DNA of 64,000 bases, taken from positions 136,790 to 200,789 of the forward strand of contig NW_005434610.1 in the NCBI RefSeq assembly GCF_000315625.1. Direction: 5' to 3'. The notes beneath the pieces are model-generated. The model searched no databases. It had not been told where the DNA came from and worked only from the letters and a program-made list of their open reading frames with translations. Positions 14,983 through 24,999 of the stretch are shown one piece after another. This stretch comes from Guillardia theta CCMP2712 (Eukaryota; Protista; Cryptophyta). The stretch's first letter is position 1. Each line of letters opens with the position of its first letter. A program made the translations under genes and the position numbers.

Positions 14983-17900
14983 ATGAGAGGACTGGCTTCT
15001 TTCCGCATCGTCGCTGTGAAAGTGTTGGGTAGATCCTTCAAAACTCCTCTGTACGGCTGGTTGGAACGCAACCATGGTCAGAGGAGACACCTGGCTTCTT
15101 ATACAGATCCGGCATCTGATCCGATCAAGTCAGGCATTGACAAAGATTTGAGTGGAAGTTCGGAGCAGGCCTCGAAAGCTCGCGATGATCCTGAACAATC
15201 GCAGTATCAGAAAAAAACGCAGCTTGAGCATGTTCTCCTCAGGCCTGACGTGTACGTCGGGTCCATGGAGCAAGTTACGAAGCAGATGTTGGTGTATGAT
15301 GTCAAATCGAGCTCGGTGCGACTCCGATCCATCTCTTACATCCCTGGCTTGTTGAAAATCTTCGACGAGATCCTGGTCAATGCGGCGGATAACAAGCAAA
15401 GGGACGTAGCGACCAAGCAGATCAAAGTCAAGTTTGACAAGAAGAATGCAACCGTGCAAGTCTACAACGACGGAAAAGGGATTCCTGTGTGCCGGCATGC
15501 AAAGTATGATGACGTGTATATCCCCGAGCTGGTGATGGGAAACTTGCTGGCAGGATCAAACTTTGACGATACCAAGACTCGCCTTGCAGGGGGCAGACAC
15601 GGCTACGGGGCTAAGCTCACCAATATCTTCAGCTCCGTCTTCACTATCGAGACTGTCGATTCTTCTCGGGCTCTCCTGTACAGACAGACTTGGCGAAACA
15701 ACATGACAACCTGCGAACCTCCGACAATAGAAAAGTTGACAGGAAAGGCGGAGGATTATACCAAAGTGACTTTCACGATTGATCTGAAAAGATTCGGGAA
15801 GAAGTCTTTGGACGATGACACGATAGCTTTGTGGGCAAGAAGGGTGGTGGATGTTGCTGGCTGCAACAATGGCTTGAAGTGCTGGATCAACGGCACCTTG
15901 GTCAAGGTTCGAAGTTTCCAAGACCTCATGCTCCTTTACCGCTCTGCGCTCACGCAGGAGAAAGGAGCAGAAGGCGCAAAGGCAGTAGAGGTGATTGAGG
16001 ATAATTCGGGGAGGTGGAAGGTCGCAGTCGGGAGTGCGGTCAATAACTCGTCCAGCGAGCTTTCGATGAGCTTTGTGAACAGCGTGTGGACTTCAAGAGG
16101 CGGTACCCACCTGAAGCACGTACAGGATCTCTTCATAAAATATGTCGCAACGGTCCTCAACAATAAGTACAAGGACCTTGACGTCAACGAAAGGACGATC
16201 AGGAACAACATGTGGATCGGTGTTGCCGCTCTTATTGAGAACCCCTCGTTCGACACGCAAGGCAAGGAGCTGCTCGTCACCCCCACAGAGAAGTGCGCTT
16301 TCTGTTTTCCACACCCACGGGGTTGAGTTTGGCCCGCCAGGTTTGGATCGGAGTTCAAAGTCTCCAGGAAAAAGATGGAGGAAGTCGTTCAAAAGACGGA
16401 GATCGTTGAAAGAATCGTCAAGGCAATCGCATTCAGCTCCGCTTTTTGGTCTGACTTGGTTTGCAGGTGTTGGAAGGAAAGCTAGTGAAGGACTTGGACA
16501 AGAGCTCAAAGACGGTGAGGATGACAAATAGGATGACGACTGTGATGATCATGATAACCATCATGATTTCCCCCAATAAGCTTGTCTGGTGCTGATCAAC
16601 ATGTTGTGAAGATGGGAGCTTGGTCGCAAAAGCGCCTCCTTCTACCGAAGCTCGAAGATGCAAACTGGGCAGGGACAGCCAAGTCAAGGGAATGCACTCT
16701 CATTCTGACTGAGGGAGACAGCGCAAAGGTTGTGGATATGGGTAAGAGGAGGAGGAACTGAAGGGTGGAACAGGCACTTGCAGTCAGCGGGCTTTCGGTG
16801 TTGGGCAGAGACAGGTTCGAAGTCTGAGATCATGCAGGCATGAGTTGCGTGGGATTGTAATCGTCTCAAACAGATACGGTGTGTTTCCTCTCAAAGGAAA
16901 GCTGATCAACGTTCGTGAAGCAACTAACTTACAAGTGAATCGAGAGTTTGGTTGGGTTGGGAATGAGAAGACTTGCCCAGGTGAAGAACAACACTGAGCT
17001 TGCAGCTATCAAGGCTATCCTCGGACTTCAGAACTCGGCGACTTACGACTTGGACAAGAAGGAGAGCTCTGCGTTTCCGCTCAGATACGGCAAAGTCATG
17101 TTAATGACGGACCAAGACCATGACGGGTCTCACATCAAGGGGTTGTTCATCAACATGGTCCGTGAGCCGTTCCCCGACTGTGAGGGGAGGTGACTGATGT
17201 GACGAACAGATACATGCGTACTGGCCTGAGCTGCTGAGATCCAACCAGTTCTTGTTCGAGTTCGTGACTCCGATCGTCAAGGTTTACACGGGAAGCCAAG
17301 ATTTGAGAAAGACCAACAAAGCTTACAAGACCTTCTTCACTCAGATTGGTGGACTTGATGCATGACTGCTACTTGGGATGCTGAATCTAGATGCTCTCAC
17401 CTATGCAGAATTCAAGCAGTGGTGGGACTCGTTGCAGGACAAAGATAGGAATAAGTTTCACATTAAGGTTGAAACTTTTGCTGTTCGTGATGTACAATCT
17501 CACATCGTTGGTCAAGTACTACAAAGGTTTGGGAACAAACACGGCGCAAGAAGGGAAGGAATATTTCAGCAACCTGGAAGTGAGATCCACAGTCTGTCTG
17601 TTGTGACCTGACCCGACCATGATAGTCACATCGATTGAGCTTTGTGTACGATGGAAAGCAAGACGACAACTCAATCACCTTGGCGTTCTCCAAGGTTTTT
17701 AAAGCTCTTTCGAACGAGTGGATGATGGTGAAACATGAAGGATGCGGACGAGAGGAAGAAATGGATTCAAGATCATGCAGACAGGTGGAGCTGAAAGCTC
17801 ATGAAGGAGGGTTGTTCTGTTCGTTCCATGGTGACTCGTGTGCTTGCTAGCGTTGTTAAGGACTTCATCGACCACAGCAAAGACAAACTCTCATTCACAG

Positions 17901-19055
17901 ATTTTGTATACAAAGAACTTGTCCAGTACAGGTAAGAAGAACTCATTTGTCATGGAGCGATTATCTTGCTATGGTTGTGAATGGATTTGACTTTGCGATT
18001 CTCAGCTACGCCAGCTTGCAACGGGCCATTCCTTCGCTCATCGACGGATGCAAACCCTCTCAACGCAAGATCTTGTACGCTTGCTTCAAGCGCAAGTTGA
18101 ACAAGGAGATCAAGGTGCAGGAGAATTGCAGGATGACACTGATGATGATAACAACGATGATGATAATGATGATCACGATGATGATCACGACTTTGATAAT
18201 TACGATGATGATAATGATGATGATAATGATGACGACGACGACGACGACGAAGACGACGACGACGACGACGATTGAGAAGTAGATGATGATAATCTGCAGG
18301 TTGCACAGCTTGCTGGTTACATCTCTGAGCACACAGCATATCATCATGGAGAAAACTCTCTTCACAGTGCCATTGGTGAGATGTGAGGAAGCTGGAGAGA
18401 GGAGGAGGAGGAGGAGGAGGAGGAGGAGGAGGAGGAGGAGGAGGAGGAGGAGGAGGAGGAGGAGGAGGAGGAGGAGGAGGAGGAGGAGGAGGAGGAGACA
18501 GCGTGTGAGTGCAAATAACCAATGATGGCATCAGTCAAGATGGCCCAGCGATTCGTCGGCTCAAACAATCTGCCCCTCCTCTACCCATCCGGTCAGTTCG
18601 GTACAAGACTGCAGGCAATCCTTGCCATCTCCTCCTCCTCCATTTGTTGACGGGAAGACGACAGGGAGGAGAGGACGCGGCCAGTCCGAGATATATCTTC
18701 ACTTCCCTCAACAGCTACACGCGCATGATCTTTCCCGAGGAGGATGACTTGCTGTTGATCCCGCAGTCTGAGGATGGATTGGAGATTGAGCCGAGATATT
18801 ACATCCCGATCATCCCGATGACGCTGGTCAACGGAGCTCAGGTAGAGGAGGGGAGGGAAGAAACATGCGAAAATGGGAGGCCGAGGAGGGACCGGGCAGG
18901 GATTCGATGTGATAAAAGGAGGCAGAGCCTGTTGAAAGAGAATGAAATGAGGAAGACGGTGTAAGAAGGGAAATGATGTCCAGGAGGGAGGATGGCGCGC
19001 CGGAGCAGGTGCAGGTGCAGGTGCAGGTGCAGGAGGAGTAGGAGCAGGTGCAGCT

Positions 19056-19092
<37 letters not shown>

Positions 19093-20795
19093 AATGCTTG
19101 TGGGTTCTCACACAAGGTTCGCAGGGGATCGGGACGGGGTGGTCCACCTCAATTCCCTCCTACAACCCGTTCGAGATCATCACCATCCTGCGCTCGATGA
19201 TCCGCGAGTCGAAGGGGGGCGGGGGAGGGCAGGAGAGCTTGAGGAAGAGCAGGGAACTAGTACCATGGTACGCCGGGTTCAAGGGGACAATCCAGAAGCA
19301 CAAAGACGGGGAGAGGTTCACCTGCTCCGGCTGTTTTGAGGTGGAGGACACGAATCCGCTGCGGATCCGGGTGACGGAGCTCCCCATCGGGATGTGGACG
19401 GAAGACTTCCAGGACCACCTCAACCGGCTCTCGGACAAGACGGAGGACAGAGCTGCGATGATCTCCTCCTACACCACCAACAACTCGGAGGCAGTCATCG
19501 ACACGACGATCACGTTCACGGAGGATGCAGAGAAGAAGCTGATGGAGAGTGGGAAGCTGAACAAGCAGGAGCTGATGAAGGTGCTCAAATTGATCAATCC
19601 CATCAGCCTCGGCAACATGGTCCTGTTCGCTGCTGACGGCAAGATCAAGCAATACTACAACCCTCTTGATATCCTCGCCGATTACTTTCCCGAGAGGATG
19701 AGGCTGTATGAACGCAGGAAGCAGATGCAGGAAGCTCGTCTTGCTGCTCAGGCCATGCGCTTTACCAATCAGGTGGGTCCGATCCTCGTCCCCCTCTCTC
19801 CTTCGACCTCCCCTTTATCCATCCATCTCCCCTTCAAACCCCCTCCCTCTCTTCTTGCTCTCTTTCTGCAGCTCTCTCTACCTCCCTCCCTCCCTCTGCT
19901 CTTCTTGCCGGTTTCTGCCGCTCGTCCTCCCCCTATTGCGTCCTGCAGCTGCAATCCCCGTTCCGCGCTGCTCCTCCTCCTCCGCCAACCTCACTCATGC
20001 ACCAGTATCGCTTTCTCGGAGCGGTGGCCAGCGGGGAATTCAAGTTCGAGGGCAAGTCGAAGGATGAGCTTGAAAAGGAGCTGAAGGAAAAAGGTCAGAA
20101 CGAGCCAGTCCTGGTCTCCTCCTCATCATCCTCATCCTCATCCTCATCATCCTTCTCCTCCTTCTCCTTCTCCTTCTCCTTCTCCTTCTACTACTACTAC
20201 TGCTACTGCTACTACTACTACTCCTCCTTCTATTACTACTCCTCATCCTCATTCCTTTTGCAGGGTTCAACACACAGGAAGAAATTGAGAAGGTCTTCAC
20301 TGAGAAGAAGCATGTTGCAGCGCCCAAGTCAGAAGGAGCCTCGCTCGAGTATGTGTATGCTTCCTCTACCATTCTGCATGTTCACTTCGATGGCGCAGGG
20401 CGGAGGAGGAAGAGGAAGAGGAGTTAAAGGAGAGCAACAATGGGTCTGATGACCTCGCTGTCTCCCCTACACTCACAAGGGTATTGGACAGGTTCGCATA
20501 TCTGCTGCAGATGCCAATGTGGAGCGCAACGAGAGAGCGGAGGGAGAAGCTGAAGAAGCAGGTAAGCTCGACAGGAGGTGAACTCCGCTCCTGATCCGCT
20601 CGACCAGGTGGATCAGGTAGAAGGCGAGCTCAAGCGTTTGAAGGGTGAGAGCAAACAGTTCATTCCTCTGCCCTCCTCCTCTACATCCTCTCCCTCCTTC
20701 TCACTCCTTCTTCCTTAGGGATCTCGCCGGAGGACATCTGGCTTGCTGAACTCGATGCCCTCGAAACGAAACTTGGGACTGTGATTGAATCATAA
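14983..20795 (+). CDS. TOP2: Eukaryote-type DNA topoisomerase IIA, probably organelle (mitochondrion)-targeted, lacking the C-terminal domain; many introns
   Basis: YQKKTQLEHVLLRPD, FDEILVNAADN, GGRHGYGAKLTN, LILTEGDSAK, PLKGKLINV, MTDQDHDGSHIKG, YYKGLGT, DGCKPSQRK, YHHGE, AASPRYIF and GIGTGWST motifs; ends DIWLAELDALE..IES*. Confidence 0.95.
18125..18497. repeat. Intronic (GAT/GAC)n and (GAG)n microsatellites in TOP2, flanking a short exon
   Basis: Seen directly; they flank the VAQLAGYISEHTAYHHGE exon. Confidence 0.9.
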
Positions 20796-22325: not shown

Positions 22326-24515
22326 TTAGTTCCTCATGCTCGCTCCTTTGTCTGCAGTGAGACGGGCTCGGATGTTCACCTGCATGCACCTCGACCCTCC
22401 GCTCTTGCTCCCTCCCTCCTTGTCTTCTTCCTCCGACATGAACGACTTCCTCGAGGCAAACACAAGCCCCTGCCCCGGCCGCAGCTCCAGGATCCTCTCC
22501 CAGTCCTCCTGCACCAGCGGCAGCTTCGCCGCCAAGTAATGGTACCAGTCGTGGGAGTGGAAGCGATGGAGGACGGCGAAGGAGATCAGTTCCAGCAGCT
22601 CGGGCGCCAGCGTGCTGGGGTTCTGAGTGCTGACAGCCAGCCGCATGTTGTCATGGCGCATGAGGCGGGCGATGTTGACAATCGACTGGCTGAGGCCGTC
22701 GGACTCCACCCCTTGCATGTACTTGTGCGCCTCGTCGAGCACGAGGAGCTTCCCGGTCACGTGACCTCCCAGCGTCCTGAACTGCTCGACGAGGATCTGG
22801 AAGATGCTGTTGGCCTCTGCTGACGTCAGCATAGGGTCGGTCAAGTCCACGATGACGAGCTTTCCTGGTTTGCAGGCGTCTTGCAGGTCCGAGGACGTGC
22901 GAGCGAGCGAGGTGTTGACGGAGCTCTCCTGGACGATGGACTGCAGCAGTTGAATCCTCTGAGCCAGCGGACCAGCTTGAGTGGTAAGCTTGCACTCGCT
23001 CTGAAGCTGCTTGAGCAGCTCGGCGAGGGACATGCTGCTGTTGTTCCGCTGGTTCGAGCGCAGGAGTTGCGTCATCATTGAGACGTAGAGCTGATTGTCC
23101 TCCTCCTTCAACCGCATGATCCTCTTGATATGATCGCTCGTCAGTCTGTTCCACTTGAACAGCAGCGGCTTCACTGTCACTCCCTTCCCGTAGTACTGCT
23201 GGCGCTGCTTGTAGTAGCAGGGAGATACCAGGACGACCACGTCCTTCAAGTTCAGCTCACAAGGAGCTCCTGTCTTGCTGTTGGCTCGCAGCATCTGCTC
23301 TAGCATCGTGTTGGGGCTCATCAGCCCTGTCGCCTCCACCTTGGCTTGAGGGTTCGTGTCGTAGTGCAGGACCAGAGTGGTCATGGGCTTGTTCAAGTTA
23401 ACGACCTTGGAGGAGGGGAACGGAAGCATGCATGCTTCCAACACGCAGCCGATCGTGTGGCTCTTTCCTCCTCCTTGTACTCCCACGGCAGCCATGCAGA
23501 AGGGCTCGGAAGTGTTGAGGTACACTGGCTTCCTCCTCCCTTCCCGGTCCACGCGCGAACCAAGGAGCGCGTACTCCTCCCAGTGCCTTGCTGCCAACTC
23601 GTCTCCAATGCAGTAGCCTCGGAAGGGATCCTCGTGCTCTTCATGCTTGTAGTCCCCCAAGAAGTACTCCTCCACATCCTCGTCGAAGGAGAAGTTGACC
23701 CTGAAGACGCTTGTCGCCTGCTCTGTGCTCGATGACGACCGTGACGAACTGGAGTCCGAACCCCCGTCTCCGTCCTCGAGCACGAAGCATCCCCTCTTCC
23801 AACTGTCGTCTTCCGAAGCGCTCGACATGTTTCTGTACGCGTTCAGCAGCATGGCGGCTCCATACGCTGCCTTGCGATGGAGGTCCTGCCCGAGAGGCCG
23901 GCTCCTCCACAGTCCCATCCAGTGCTGAGGGAAGAGAAGGGGCTTCCTGATCCCGCACCATTCCTGGATCACCTTGGAGAAGCTCGTGCGGGGATGCGGA
24001 GGAGTTTCCTTCAGGAACGAGTAGGCCGCATGGAGGTCAAGGAGGCTGGTGGTCTTGACCCTACACATCTGATACAGCGCCTTCATGGTCTCTGTCCCGT
24101 TGTAAGCGACTTTGATGACCTTCTCGTCGGCCATCAGGCTTGACAAGCCGTTTGAGAGCATGTCGGGGCAAGACATGACGTCGAAGACGAAGGAGGTGTT
24201 CTCGTCGATGCCGACTGCTATCACGCTCACGTACCCGTTTGCCCTCAGCTCACCGTGGCAGGAGACAGCCACAGCCCCGATGGTCTCACCGCACGCTCGG
24301 ATCCGTTGCATGGCCAGGTCGAAGCAGGAGCCAAGATCAACGAGGTAAACGTACTGCACAGGAGGAGCTGTTGTATCCGACGACGATCCCTCAGGAACAT
24401 GGATATAGGAGAACGTGAGGGACGGTTGGTTTGCTTGTTCTGCAACTTTAATGTCAAGCTTATCTTCGAACGCAGAGATAATGTCAAGATGCTGACCAAC
24501 TGATGCAATCGACAT
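22326..24515 (-). CDS. Intronless fusion: degenerate EXD1/Egalitarian-like 3'-5' exonuclease domain + HerA/FtsK-like P-loop ATPase
   Basis: N-terminal part has AVAVSCHG..FVFDV..GLSSLM.DEKVIKV..LLDLHAA..WRSRPL. C-terminal part has Walker A GVQGGGKS, Walker B LLVLDEAHKY and AVSTQNP. Confidence 0.8.
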   Translation of the reverse strand: MSIASVGQHLDIISAFEDKLDIKVAEQANQPSLTFSYIHVPEGSSSDTTAPPVQYVYLVDLGSCFDLAMQRIRACGETIGAVAVSCHGELRANGYVSVIAVGIDENTSFVFDVMSCPDMLSNGLSSLMADEKVIKVAYNGTETMKALYQMCRVKTTSLLDLHAAYSFLKETPPHPRTSFSKVIQEWCGIRKPLLFPQHWMGLWRSRPLGQDLHRKAAYGAAMLLNAYRNMSSASEDDSWKRGCFVLEDGDGGSDSSSSRSSSSTEQATSVFRVNFSFDEDVEEYFLGDYKHEEHEDPFRGYCIGDELAARHWEEYALLGSRVDREGRRKPVYLNTSEPFCMAAVGVQGGGKSHTIGCVLEACMLPFPSSKVVNLNKPMTTLVLHYDTNPQAKVEATGLMSPNTMLEQMLRANSKTGAPCELNLKDVVVLVSPCYYKQRQQYYGKGVTVKPLLFKWNRLTSDHIKRIMRLKEEDNQLYVSMMTQLLRSNQRNNSSMSLAELLKQLQSECKLTTQAGPLAQRIQLLQSIVQESSVNTSLARTSSDLQDACKPGKLVIVDLTDPMLTSAEANSIFQILVEQFRTLGGHVTGKLLVLDEAHKYMQGVESDGLSQSIVNIARLMRHDNMRLAVSTQNPSTLAPELLELISFAVLHRFHSHDWYHYLAAKLPLVQEDWERILELRPGQGLVFASRKSFMSEEEDKEGGSKSGGSRCMQVNIRARLTADKGASMRN

Positions 24516-24999
24516 GATGCGATCTCAAGCGAAAGTCTTGTATTGAACTTTTTTTTTGTTTTTGTGGAAGAGGCTGTTTCGTTTGCTCTGTAGGAACAAA
24601 AGAGCAGCAAGTACAGGAGAAAAGGGAGTAGCTGATTCAAGAAGACGACGGGGAAAGAGATTGGGAGAGGAGGAGGAGGAGGAGGGAGACGGGTTAGGCT
24701 GGCGGCGTGGCTGGAGTTCGAGGGGAACGTTTCCCTTTTACTTCAAGGGGGGGGCGGGGGGCAAGGCTACAAAAATCCTCAAGGTTACGAAAGGGTGGGT
24801 ACTTCGATATAGAAACAGGGGGTGATACAACAAAGCGAATTATTACAAGGGGTGGGGTGGTACTAGAAGGCGAGAAGGTAGGTGATCAATAGACAAACAG
24901 GGGGTAGTAGAGATGACCGGTTGGTGTTTCAATGGGCCAACAGGGGGTCCAATCAGTAGTAAGAAGGGGTACTCCTGTACTAGTGAAGATCCTCTGCGT

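What the first reader, a model, noticed from the sequence alone, without database searches (positions are those of the whole stretch)
22326..24515. Dead EXD1-like exonuclease fused to a HerA/FtsK-like ATPase: candidate eukaryotic nucleic-acid sensing or defence module
Seen: a single-exon 729-aa ORF among intron-rich neighbours. The N-terminal domain follows the DnaQ/EXD1 pattern, but the acidic catalytic positions appear replaced (DCEG>SCHG, HDxxxD>YNGTET, YAAxD>KAAYG). The ATPase motifs (GVQGGGKS, LDEAH, STQxP) are intact. Known: inactive EXD1/Egalitarian domains act as RNA-binding adaptors in small-RNA and transport pathways, and HerA-type ring ATPases pair with nucleases or effectors in prokaryotic repair and anti-phage systems. 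Inference: an RNA/DNA-end-binding sensor coupled to an oligomeric translocase, possibly antiviral or anti-transposon, acquired by retroposition or transfer. I know of no characterised protein with this architecture.
Basis: partly seen in the sequence, partly recalled or inferred. Interest (0 to 1): 0.75.

Follow-up and report, generated by a model that had tools for sequence, protein, structure and literature searches.

The report
Dead exonuclease fused to HerA-type ATPase
The alga Guillardia theta has one intact gene that joins a catalytically dead, Egalitarian/EXD1-like exonuclease domain to an apparently active HerA-type ring ATPase. The ATPase belongs to a large, untested protist family that usually carries other RNA-binding domains in that position.

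Summary
Window 22326-24515 (-) is a complete 729-aa single-exon ORF.

- **N-terminal domain (about 53-233):** it matches the 3'-5' exonuclease family PF01612 above Pfam's cut-off. Its best solved relative is Drosophila Egalitarian. All five DEDDy catalytic positions are replaced (S85, H87, T143, K215, G219).
- **C-terminal domain (300-729):** it folds confidently (pLDDT >90) as a HerA/FtsK ATPase (Z 27.8 to Sulfolobus HerA). It lacks HerA's HAS barrel. Walker A, Walker B, a likely arginine finger and STQ are intact.

1. The ATPase family is not new. It is the eukaryotic 'clade-6' HerA/FtsK group noted in silico by Krishnan et al. 2024 (PMC10853773). The query has both of that group's marks, the helical insert and the C-terminal RxRhsxDsGx[ST] tail.
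2. The gene is single-copy in G. theta. It has a transcribed Hanusia phi orthologue and nests inside a eukaryotic clade, so recent transfer or retroposition is not supported.
3. The exonuclease fusion was found only in these two cryptophytes. Relatives carry LOTUS, dsRNA zinc fingers or SAP instead.

Best reading: a non-catalytic nucleic-acid (probably structured-RNA) binding adaptor on a ring ATPase. A defence role is plausible but untested.

The parts
22326..24515 (-). Complete single-exon ORF, 729 aa plus stop codon
   Evidence: An in-frame TGA lies four codons upstream of the ATG. The orthologue P0001 aligns from the same Met.
23817..24359 (-). DEDDy (DnaQ-like, RNase D / EXD1 / Egalitarian-type) exonuclease-homology domain, residues about 53-233, catalytically dead
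   Evidence: PF01612 above cut-off. Egalitarian is the best PDB sequence match. 25 of 30 ESM Atlas hits carry PF01612. All Foldseek hits of a low-confidence model are DEDDy exonucleases.
24246..24269 (-). ExoI motif position, AVSCHGEL (residues 83-90). Catalytic D is S85 and catalytic E is H87.
   Evidence: Alignments. Hanusia has ACHG.
24075..24119 (-). ExoII motif position, KVAYNGTET (within residues 133-147). Catalytic D is T143.
   Evidence: T143 is also T in Hanusia.
23850..23882 (-). ExoIII motif position, RKAAYGAAM (within residues 212-222). Y is K215 and D is G219.
   Evidence: MAFFT with G. theta paralogues L002 and L004. Hanusia has K and R. This part of the alignment is the least certain.
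23718..23786 (-). Ser-rich, low-complexity linker (residues 244-266), predicted disordered
   Evidence: Its length differs between Guillardia and Hanusia.
22329..23618 (-). HerA/FtsK-superfamily P-loop ATPase core, residues 300-729 ('clade-6', Mad8-like), without a HAS barrel
   Evidence: AF2 pLDDT >90. Foldseek top hits are all HerA. VIA Z 27.8 to 4d2i_A, model 304-728 against chain 114-473, and DndH-C 7es4 at Z 23.9. PADLOC mad8 at E 2.9e-17.
23454..23489 (-). Walker A, AVGVQGGGKSHT (residues 343-354)
   Evidence: Invariant G345, Q347, G348, G350, K351, S352 and H353 in 44 homologues.
22866..23153 (-). Helical insert in the P-loop domain (residues about 455-550; helices 460-466, 476-490, 497-507, 511-527)
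   Evidence: Secondary structure of the model. It corresponds to the '4-helical insert' of PMC10853773.
22722..22754 (-). Walker B, GKLLVLDEAHK (residues 588-598)
   Evidence: Invariant D594, E595, A596 and H597.
22614..22676 (-). Candidate arginine finger(s) R617 and R620, and sensor-like STQ 629-631
   Evidence: R617 and R620 are invariant; S629, T630 and Q631 are nearly invariant. Assigning them as finger and sensor is inference from their spacing after Walker B in HerA.
22338..22385 (-). C-terminal signature MQVNIRARLTADKGAS (residues 711-726), which fits hxhxxRxRhsxDsGx[ST]
   Evidence: Regex and family survey: 112 of 179 members with a complete C-end match a strict pattern. The motif is defined in PMC10853773.

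Best explanation
This is a vertically inherited cellular gene of Guillardia/Hanusia-type cryptophytes. Its product has two working parts.

(1) The N-terminal exonuclease-homology domain has lost the whole DEDDy metal-binding and catalytic set. It most likely serves as a non-catalytic nucleic-acid-binding adaptor, probably for structured or double-stranded RNA, as the homologous domain does in Drosophila Egalitarian.

(2) The C-terminal HerA/FtsK-type ATPase has complete Walker A, Walker B and arginine-finger residues. It most likely assembles into a ring, as its solved relatives do, and uses ATP to translocate or remodel the bound nucleic acid or ribonucleoprotein. Its invariant C-terminal tail (RxRhsxDsGxS) probably docks a partner or a neighbouring subunit.

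The exonuclease-like domain occupies the position where most relatives carry a LOTUS domain, so it is probably a lineage-specific swap of one RNA-binding sensor for another.

Shown here: the domain identities, the dead catalytic positions, the intact ATPase motifs, single copy, conservation in Hanusia, and the family context. Inferred: RNA as ligand, ring assembly, translocation, and any immune role.
For: - **Gene is real and conserved.** It is a complete ORF. The Hanusia phi transcript-derived orthologue is 74% identical overall. Identity by region is 63% in the exonuclease domain, 82% in the ATPase and 36% over the first 39 residues.
- **N-domain homology.** It rests on PF01612, Egalitarian, T. 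brucei RNase D, the ESM Atlas and Foldseek.
- **Catalytic loss.** All five catalytic positions are replaced in both species.
- **Egalitarian precedent.** LOTUS-like domains plus the ExoHD form an RNA stem-loop pocket. The catalytic residues lie about 15 A from the RNA and are dispensable (PMC13186709).
- **ATPase.** pLDDT is above 90, with Z 27.8 to HerA and Z 23.9 to DndH-C. The motifs are invariant.
- **Family size.** 3023 representatives score at E<=1e-3 and 929 at E<=1e-30.
- **N-termini of 182 members.** LOTUS in 13, zf-met/zf-C2H2_jaz in 3, SAP in 1, WW in 1. PF01612 occurs only in the two cryptophytes.
- **Phylogeny.** The cryptophyte pair nests in a 97%-supported clade rich in LOTUS-type N-termini.
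- **Bacterial relatives are defence components.** These are Mad8 and giant proteins next to a PDC-M21C-like gene.
Against: - No experiment exists on any member of the family.
- All characterised FtsK/HerA ATPases act on double-stranded DNA, not RNA.
- The N-domain could not be folded with confidence (pLDDT 41-55). Its basic RNA-binding patches could therefore not be compared with Egalitarian's, and no XAD-like helical module follows it.
- One family member carries a SAP (DNA-binding) domain.
- Most members have N-termini with no recognisable domain.
- PMC10853773 interprets the eukaryotic clade as belonging to 'novel genomic elements', not to cellular RNA biology.
Confidence: 0.5

Rival explanations
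1. It is a eukaryotic immune sensor-motor descended from bacterial defence ATPases (Mad8 / DndH-type). The dead exonuclease domain recognises viral or transposon RNA or DNA ends. The ring ATPase then activates or scaffolds an effector recruited by the C-terminal tail, as HerA does for Sir2, DUF4297 or NurA. This is a more specific form of the best explanation.
For: - The closest prokaryotic relatives are defence-system ATPases: PADLOC mad8 at E 2.9e-17 and the MAD7-MAD8 module required for defence.
- Giant bacterial proteins with this C-terminal domain sit next to a PDC-M21C-like gene.
- Structural neighbours include Sir2-HerA, DUF4297-HerA and TdpAB.
- Variable N-terminal sensor-like domains are typical of conflict systems.
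Against: - It is single-copy, with no paralogue expansion.
- The core is strongly conserved (82% with Hanusia) rather than diversifying.
- No effector domain is fused, and eukaryotic genomes offer no operon partner to inspect.
- No infection or expression data exist.
Confidence: 0.2
2. It is a component, active or domesticated, of a mobile 'genomic element', as proposed for eukaryotic clade-6 HerA/FtsK proteins. In that case the ATPase pumps or packages element DNA.
For: - PMC10853773 describes the clade as part of novel genomic elements, with function 'such as mobility'.
- Superfamily members include conjugation (VirB4, TrwB) and virus-packaging ATPases.
- Many environmental homologues, like this one, are single uninterrupted ORFs.
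- A Crypton-like recombinase was noted about 5 kb away by another reader. I did not test any link to it.
Against: - It is single-copy in an 87-Mb genome by both protein and profile search.
- No terminal inverted or direct repeats flank the gene.
- The neighbour is topoisomerase II.
- An orthologue is retained in another genus.
- No relatives were found in IMG/VR. NCLDV A32-type ATPases are only weak structural matches.
Confidence: 0.1
3. It is a DNA-directed enzyme in repair, recombination or chromosome handling. The exonuclease-like domain holds 3' DNA ends as WRN-type domains do, and the ATPase translocates double-stranded DNA like HerA in HerA-NurA.
For: - Every characterised HerA/FtsK relative moves double-stranded DNA. 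The top structural hits are HerA-NurA complexes.
- A SAP-domain member exists.
- WRN and EXD2 exonuclease domains appear among the fold matches.
Against: - The nearest sequence relatives of the N-domain are RNA-binding or RNA-processing proteins: Egalitarian and T. brucei RNase D.
- The commonest alternative N-domains are LOTUS and the dsRNA zinc fingers zf-met/zf-C2H2_jaz.
- No nuclease activity can be supplied by the dead domain, and the HAS barrel that docks NurA is absent.
Confidence: 0.12
4. The N-domain is purely a protein-protein or oligomerisation module. EXD1 acts as a dimeric adaptor in this way. Here the domain would replace the missing HAS barrel to organise the ring or dock a partner, and would bind no nucleic acid.
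For: - The HAS barrel, which mediates ring assembly and partner docking in HerA, is absent.
- EXD1 (5fis) is among the fold matches. That EXD1 acts as a dimeric adaptor in the piRNA machinery is my recollection and was not checked here.
- LOTUS domains also bind proteins, namely DEAD-box helicases (cited in PMC13186709).
Against: - The Egalitarian ExoHD, the closest relative, does contact RNA.
- A long disordered Ser-rich linker separates the domain from the ATPase. That suits a tethered sensor better than a ring-forming collar.
Confidence: 0.08

Closest known systems
Eukaryotic 'clade-6' HerA/FtsK ATPases (Krishnan, Burroughs, Iyer & Aravind, NAR 2024, PMC10853773)
   Same: The ATPase core has the helical insert and the terminal hxhxxRxRhsxDsGx[ST] signature. 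The bacterial relatives are the same (DndH-type C-terminal domains). The patchy spread across eukaryotes matches (stramenopiles and others).
   Different: That paper reports N-terminal wHTH-derived extensions and states there are no fusions to nuclease domains. This protein carries an inactive 3'-5' exonuclease domain. Cryptophytes are not listed in the paper. Here the gene behaves as a single-copy cellular gene, not an element.
Drosophila Egalitarian exonuclease-homology domain (PDB 9uju, 9rvy; PMC13186709) and EXD1
   Same: It is the best sequence and fold relative of residues about 75-170. It is an exonuclease fold used non-catalytically as an RNA-binding surface. Egalitarian also contains LOTUS-like domains, the module that relatives of this protein carry instead.
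   Different: Egalitarian keeps its DCEG and HD motifs, whereas here all five catalytic positions are replaced. There is no XAD, no BicD- or dynein-binding part, and a HerA-type ATPase is attached.
Archaeal and bacterial HerA (HerA-NurA; Sir2-HerA, DUF4297-HerA, TdpAB defence complexes)
   Same: It shares the RecA-like core with a helical bundle, Walker A and B, and an arginine about 22-25 residues after Walker B. Z is 20-28 over about 330 aligned residues.
   Different: Sequence identity is only 12-20%. There is no HAS barrel and no partner nuclease or effector gene. It has its own insert and C-terminal tail, and it is eukaryotic.
Mad8 of the MADS anti-phage system, and the C-terminal domain of DndH-like giant proteins
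   Same: These are the closest prokaryotic sequence relatives: PADLOC mad8 at E 2.9e-17, 27-28% identity over residues 313-728, and a similar C-terminal tail.
   Different: Those proteins work within multi-gene defence operons or as domains of 1500-1700-aa proteins. No such context exists here.

Membership tests
DEDDy / DnaQ-like 3'-5' exonuclease superfamily (Pfam PF01612) | Sequence match to the family model above the curated cut-off | tested here: met
   26.7 bits against a cut-off of 23.6, E 5.8e-6, residues 94-229. It was also found by the genome-wide family search.
DEDDy / DnaQ-like 3'-5' exonuclease superfamily (Pfam PF01612) | RNase H-like alpha/beta DnaQ fold | tested here: inconclusive
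   Both AF2 models of this domain have low confidence (pLDDT 30-60, 41). The order of secondary-structure elements fits the fold. All Foldseek hits of the weak model are DEDDy exonucleases.
DEDDy / DnaQ-like 3'-5' exonuclease superfamily (Pfam PF01612) | Catalytic pentad D, E (ExoI), D (ExoII), Y, D (ExoIII) | tested here: not met
   The positions hold S85, H87, T143, K215 and G219. Hanusia has A, H, T, K and R. It is a homologue by descent, not an active exonuclease of this mechanism.
Egalitarian / EXD1-type non-catalytic exonuclease-homology domains | Closest sequence relationship to Egalitarian/EXD1 rather than to active RNase D, Rrp6 or WRN | tested here: met
   Egalitarian scores E 3.4e-7 (2.7e-9 by profile). 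The next hit is T. brucei RNase D at 0.057 (0.0013 by profile).
Egalitarian / EXD1-type non-catalytic exonuclease-homology domains | Accompanying XAD helical module, LOTUS-like domains and adaptor partners | tested here: not met
   After the ExoIII helix comes a disordered Ser-rich linker. Pfam finds no LOTUS in the query.
Egalitarian / EXD1-type non-catalytic exonuclease-homology domains | RNA binding through basic surface patches | not testable with these tools
   This needs a confident structure or a binding assay.
FtsK/HerA superfamily of P-loop ATPases | Walker A, Walker B (hhhhDEAH), conserved arginine after Walker B, and a sensor residue | tested here: met
   The motifs are GVQGGGKS 345-352, LVLDEAH 591-597, R617/R620 and STQ 629-631, invariant or nearly so in 44 homologues.
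FtsK/HerA superfamily of P-loop ATPases | Structural match of the ATPase core | tested here: met
   Z is 27.8 to 4d2i_A, 24.7 to VirB4, 23.9 to DndH-C, 19 to TrwB and 17 to FtsK. The Foldseek top 50 are all HerA.
Canonical HerA (HerA-NurA type) | N-terminal HAS barrel | tested here: not met
   Model residues 304-728 align to chain residues 114-473 of Sulfolobus HerA. Nothing matches the barrel.
Canonical HerA (HerA-NurA type) | Hexameric ring and partner nuclease or effector | not testable with these tools
   No multimer modelling was available, and a eukaryotic locus gives no operon evidence.
Eukaryotic clade-6 HerA/FtsK (PMC10853773) | Four-helix insert in the P-loop domain | tested here: met
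   Helices 460-466, 476-490, 497-507 and 511-527 lie between core strands 447-451 and 553-557.
Eukaryotic clade-6 HerA/FtsK (PMC10853773) | C-terminal extension with the hxhxxRxRhsxDsGx[ST] motif | tested here: met
   MQVNIRARLTADKGAS lies at 711-726. R716, R718, T720, D722 and G724 are nearly invariant.
Eukaryotic clade-6 HerA/FtsK (PMC10853773) | N-terminal wHTH-derived extension and no nuclease-domain fusion | tested here: not met
   The query has a PF01612 domain instead. Relatives have LOTUS, which is a winged helix.
MADS Mad8 | Match to the Mad8 model within an eight-gene mad operon | tested here: not met
   The sequence matches at E 2.9e-17, but this is a eukaryotic gene with no operon. 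It resembles Mad8 and is not a member of that system.

The most novel reading that the evidence does not exclude
This protist family may be the first RNA-directed branch of the FtsK/HerA ring ATPases. It would be a eukaryotic sensor-motor inherited from bacterial defence ATPases (Mad8 / DndH type). Interchangeable N-terminal RNA readers would aim a ring ATPase at viral, transposon or otherwise aberrant structured RNA. Those readers are LOTUS in most lineages, dsRNA zinc fingers in some diatoms, and an Egalitarian-type dead exonuclease in cryptophytes. The invariant C-terminal tail would recruit the effector.
Probability: 0.18. Interest if true: 0.85.

Novelty: new variant of a known kind. Interest (0 to 1): 0.55.

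Why it matters
HerA/FtsK ATPases are central to prokaryotic DNA segregation, repair, conjugation and several anti-phage systems. They have almost no characterised role in eukaryotic cells.

This locus belongs to a large eukaryotic branch: 929 clusters at 50% identity score at E<=1e-30. No member has been studied at the bench.

- **Swapped N-termini.** The N-terminal position is filled by a LOTUS domain, dsRNA-type zinc fingers or an Egalitarian-type dead exonuclease. These are the kinds of modules that animal germline and mRNA-transport proteins use to read RNA.
- **A testable hypothesis.** The swapping suggests that these motors are aimed at RNA. The cryptophyte fusion is the only case found where a nuclease-fold domain is attached, contrary to the published description of the clade.
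- **If defence-related.** It would add another bacterial immune module retained in eukaryotes.
- **If not defence-related.** It would still define a new class of RNA- or RNP-linked ring ATPase.

Tried and rejected
- **Relatives of the N-domain.** Word-based searches found only the Hanusia orthologue or nothing. No paralogue of this domain exists among the ten PF01612 loci of the G. theta genome. A jackhmmer run against the N-termini of 154 family members found only Hanusia.
- **Folding the N-domain.** It was tried twice, once full-length with 44 sequences and once alone with 5 sequences including canonical paralogues. Both gave low confidence, so no surface or RNA-patch analysis was possible.
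- **Viral origin.** IMG/VR held no relatives. In BFVD the best matches are phage HerA-like proteins, and NCLDV A32 packaging ATPases are weak. Rejected.
- **Recent bacterial transfer.** Only two GTDB loci were found, and 1 of 301 sampled Alphaproteobacteria has the gene. The bacterial copy L012 nests among eukaryotes. If anything, the direction is eukaryote to bacterium, or the contig is mis-binned.
- **Mobile element.** No flanking repeats and single copy.
- **More cryptophyte fusions in JGI metagenomes.** 483 relatives were found. None of the 80 loci kept covers the exonuclease domain.
- **Literature.** Searches on locus tags of homologues returned nothing. The held supplement of PMC10853773 has no mention of Guillardia, Acanthamoeba or OST-HTH. 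PMC521647 (Iyer et al. 2004) is not held.
- **Other points.** No spliced model was needed because the gene is a single exon. Some metagenome contigs came from human-gut samples. They are gene-dense bacterial DNA, not human DNA, and were used only for ORF maps and family scans.
Full report
**Organism and ORF**

The window comes from the cryptophyte alga Guillardia theta. Earlier notes of this scan say so, and the best protein match is from the sister genus Hanusia phi. At 22326-24515 on the minus strand there is an uninterrupted ORF of 729 codons. An in-frame TGA lies four codons upstream of the ATG. The Hanusia protein P0001 comes from a transcriptome. It aligns from exactly this methionine to the last residue at 74% identity, and its extra 84 N-terminal residues are unrelated read-through. 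The single-exon gene model is therefore complete, and the orthologue is expressed in a related alga. Identity is uneven: 36% over residues 1-39, 63% over 40-250, 69% over 251-299 and 82% over 300-729. Both folded parts are thus conserved.

**N-terminal domain**

- Pfam places residues 94-229 in PF01612, the 3'-5' exonuclease family, at 26.7 bits against a cut-off of 23.6.
- Against all PDB sequences the best match is the exonuclease-homology domain of Drosophila Egalitarian, at E 3.4e-7 for the single sequence and 2.7e-9 for a two-species profile. T. brucei RNase D follows.
- In the ESM Atlas, 25 of 30 feature neighbours are PF01612 proteins.
- AlphaFold could not fold this domain confidently, because only two close sequences exist (pLDDT 30-60, 41). 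The order of strands and helices fits the DnaQ fold. Every Foldseek match of the weak model is a DEDDy exonuclease: RNase D, Egalitarian, EXD2, Rrp6, EXD1, WRN, Nibbler.
- I treat the fold as very likely but not structurally proven.

**Catalytic positions**

The HMMER alignments to Egalitarian and a MAFFT alignment with canonical G. theta paralogues (L002 Rrp6-like, L004 EXD1-like) agree. In ExoI, DxE is S85 and H87. In ExoII, D is T143. In ExoIII, Y is K215 and D is G219. Hanusia has A, H, T, K and R at the same places. The loss is therefore old and fixed. The ExoIII alignment is the least secure of the three. 'Dead' refers to the DEDDy two-metal mechanism only.

**C-terminal domain**

- Residues 296-726 fold with pLDDT above 90.
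- The top Foldseek matches in the PDB are all HerA proteins: HerA-NurA, Sir2-HerA, DUF4297-HerA and TdpAB.
- The second-look aligner gives Z 27.8 to Sulfolobus HerA, with model 304-728 against chain 114-473. It gives Z 24.7 to VirB4, 23.9 to the C-terminal domain of DndH over that whole chain, about 19 to TrwB and about 17 to FtsK.
- The ATPase is thus a HerA/FtsK-superfamily core with its helical bundle, but without HerA's N-terminal HAS barrel.
- Walker A (GVQGGGKS), Walker B (LVLDEAH), R617/R620 and STQ 629-631 are invariant or nearly so in 44 homologues. This speaks for an active, oligomeric enzyme.
- By sequence the strongest named match is PADLOC's Mad8 model, at E 2.9e-17 over residues 323-689. 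MAD7-MAD8 is one of two ATPase-associated modules (described in that paper as an ATPase-nuclease module), both required for efficient defence by the Pseudomonas MADS anti-phage system (PMC13662399).

**The family**

- The word-based search returned 45-54% identical proteins covering the ATPase part. They come from Acanthamoeba, Ectocarpus, several diatoms and many environmental eukaryotes, plus a 28% identical fungal protein.
- A profile search of 1.84 billion representatives found 3023 members at E<=1e-3 and 929 at E<=1e-30. They include a 1620-aa protein of the choanoflagellate Mylnosiga.
- The family has no Pfam model of its own, but it is not unknown. Krishnan, Burroughs, Iyer and Aravind (NAR 2024, PMC10853773) describe 'clade-6' HerA/FtsK domains 'widespread in fungi ... 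and other eukaryotes'. They mark the clade by a four-helix insert and a C-terminal extension with the signature hxhxxRxRhsxDsGx[ST], which some bacterial DndH proteins also captured.
- The query has both marks: the helices between residues 460 and 527 and MQVNIRARLTADKGAS at 711-726.
- Matching that paper, the metagenome scan found hundreds of 27-28% identical copies forming the C-terminal domain of 1500-1700-aa bacterial proteins. These hit Mad8 at 1e-31 to 1e-46 and are followed by a PDC-M21C-like gene.

**What is new here**

- The paper states that eukaryotic members have wHTH-derived N-terminal extensions and no fusion to nuclease domains.
- Among 182 members scanned, I find LOTUS/OST-HTH (a winged helix) in 13, zf-met/zf-C2H2_jaz in 3, SAP in 1 and WW in 1. 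The zf-C2H2_jaz model is described by Pfam as double-stranded-RNA-binding. PF01612 occurs only in Guillardia and Hanusia.
- Iterated searches of the query's N-domain against all family N-termini find only Hanusia.
- None of the 80 best metagenome loci kept, out of 483 relatives found, covers the exonuclease domain.
- On a tree of 170 ATPase cores, the cryptophyte pair (support 100) lies inside a 97%-supported clade of 81 rows. That clade holds 29 of the members whose N-termini cluster with the LOTUS-bearing ones.
- The simplest reading is that a cryptophyte ancestor exchanged a LOTUS-type N-terminus for a dead exonuclease-homology domain.
- The 2026 structures of Egalitarian-BicD-RNA show that Egalitarian itself is built of LOTUS-like domains followed by the exonuclease-homology domain. 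Together these form the pocket for RNA stem-loops. The putative catalytic residues lie about 15 A from the RNA and are dispensable (PMC13186709).
- The two kinds of N-terminus seen in this ATPase family are therefore the two RNA-reading modules of one well-studied RNA adaptor. This is my main argument for RNA as the ligand. It is an inference, not a test.

**Origin and genomic behaviour**

- Both a protein search and a profile search find a single copy in the 87-Mb assembly. There is no paralogue expansion.
- No terminal repeats flank the gene. The gene on one side is a multi-exon topoisomerase II.
- IMG/VR holds no relative, and giant-virus packaging ATPases are only weak fold matches.
- In GTDB genomes only two loci were found. 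One is a Sphingomonadales MAG contig with truly bacterial neighbours (RimK, FadB-like). It is the only hit among 301 sampled Alphaproteobacteria, and it nests among eukaryotic sequences.
- None of this supports recent transfer or retroposition into Guillardia. The intron-less state is shared by many environmental homologues and is not informative by itself.

**Mechanism**

I commit to the following, at about 0.5. The dead exonuclease-homology domain is tethered by a disordered Ser-rich linker and binds nucleic acid, most likely structured RNA. The C-terminal domain forms a ring ATPase that translocates or remodels that substrate or its protein complex. The invariant C-terminal tail contacts a partner or a neighbouring subunit.

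The domain identities, the dead site, the intact ATPase motifs and the family context are shown. The ligand, the ring and the activity are inferred.

A defence role is a narrower version of this reading, at about 0.2. It draws on the bacterial relatives being defence ATPases, and single copy and strong conservation count against it. The rivals are a mobile-element function, a DNA-repair-type function, and a purely protein-binding N-domain. They are listed with the tests that would separate them.

**Verdict**

The ATPase family is already on record computationally. The cryptophyte fusion to a dead Egalitarian-type exonuclease is a new architecture within it. Nothing in the family has been tested experimentally.

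**Limits**

- The N-domain structure is unresolved.
- The exact protein is not in the 15-billion-sequence collection, and no G. theta entry appeared among the homologues. The public annotation may lack the gene or model it differently.

Noticed in passing
window 14983-20449 (+): Several ORF pieces carry DNA_gyraseB/HATPase_c and DNA_topoisoIV domains. This looks like a multi-exon topoisomerase II gene next to the finding.
   Followed up: partly
L012:108-2372 (+) (Sphingomonadales MAG contig JANOKA010000099.1): A bacterial contig with RimK, FadB-like and Zn-protease neighbours encodes a member of the otherwise eukaryotic ATPase clade. The match is 39% identical over query residues 310-722 by tblastn, and up to 56% identical to the eukaryotic member P0200. 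It nests among eukaryotic sequences on the tree and is the only hit in 301 sampled Alphaproteobacteria. It may be a eukaryote-to-bacterium transfer or a mis-binned contig.
   Followed up: partly
L033-L095, e.g. L045:338-5167 (+) and L045:5167-5829 (+): Gut, rumen and soil metagenome contigs hold giant 1500-1700-aa bacterial ORFs. Their last roughly 390 residues are a Mad8-like ATPase with the same C-terminal tail. Each is followed by a roughly 220-aa gene that matches the PADLOC candidate PDC-M21C. No DndH model of PADLOC matched them at E 1e-5.
   Followed up: partly
P0074 (Mylnosiga fluctuans, 1620 aa): A choanoflagellate family member has about 1070 residues N-terminal to the ATPase core with no Pfam domain at E<=0.01.
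   Followed up: no
window 22326-24515 (-): The exact 729-aa sequence is absent from the 15-billion-protein collection, and no G. theta protein appeared among the homologues. The public gene model may be missing or different.
   Followed up: partly
window 24644-24760: A CT-rich, low-complexity tract (runs of CCT and poly-C) lies just upstream of the gene's 5' end. It is also the source of the only, spurious, inverted-repeat hit.
   Followed up: no
L009, L010, L011 (G000 contigs C131, C137, C114): Three similar short ORFs of 172-182 aa give weak PF01612 matches, with an intact DIET-type ExoI motif visible in the two aligned (L009, L010). They look like a small paralogous group of DnaQ-type exonucleases in G. 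theta, unrelated to the finding's N-domain.
   Followed up: no
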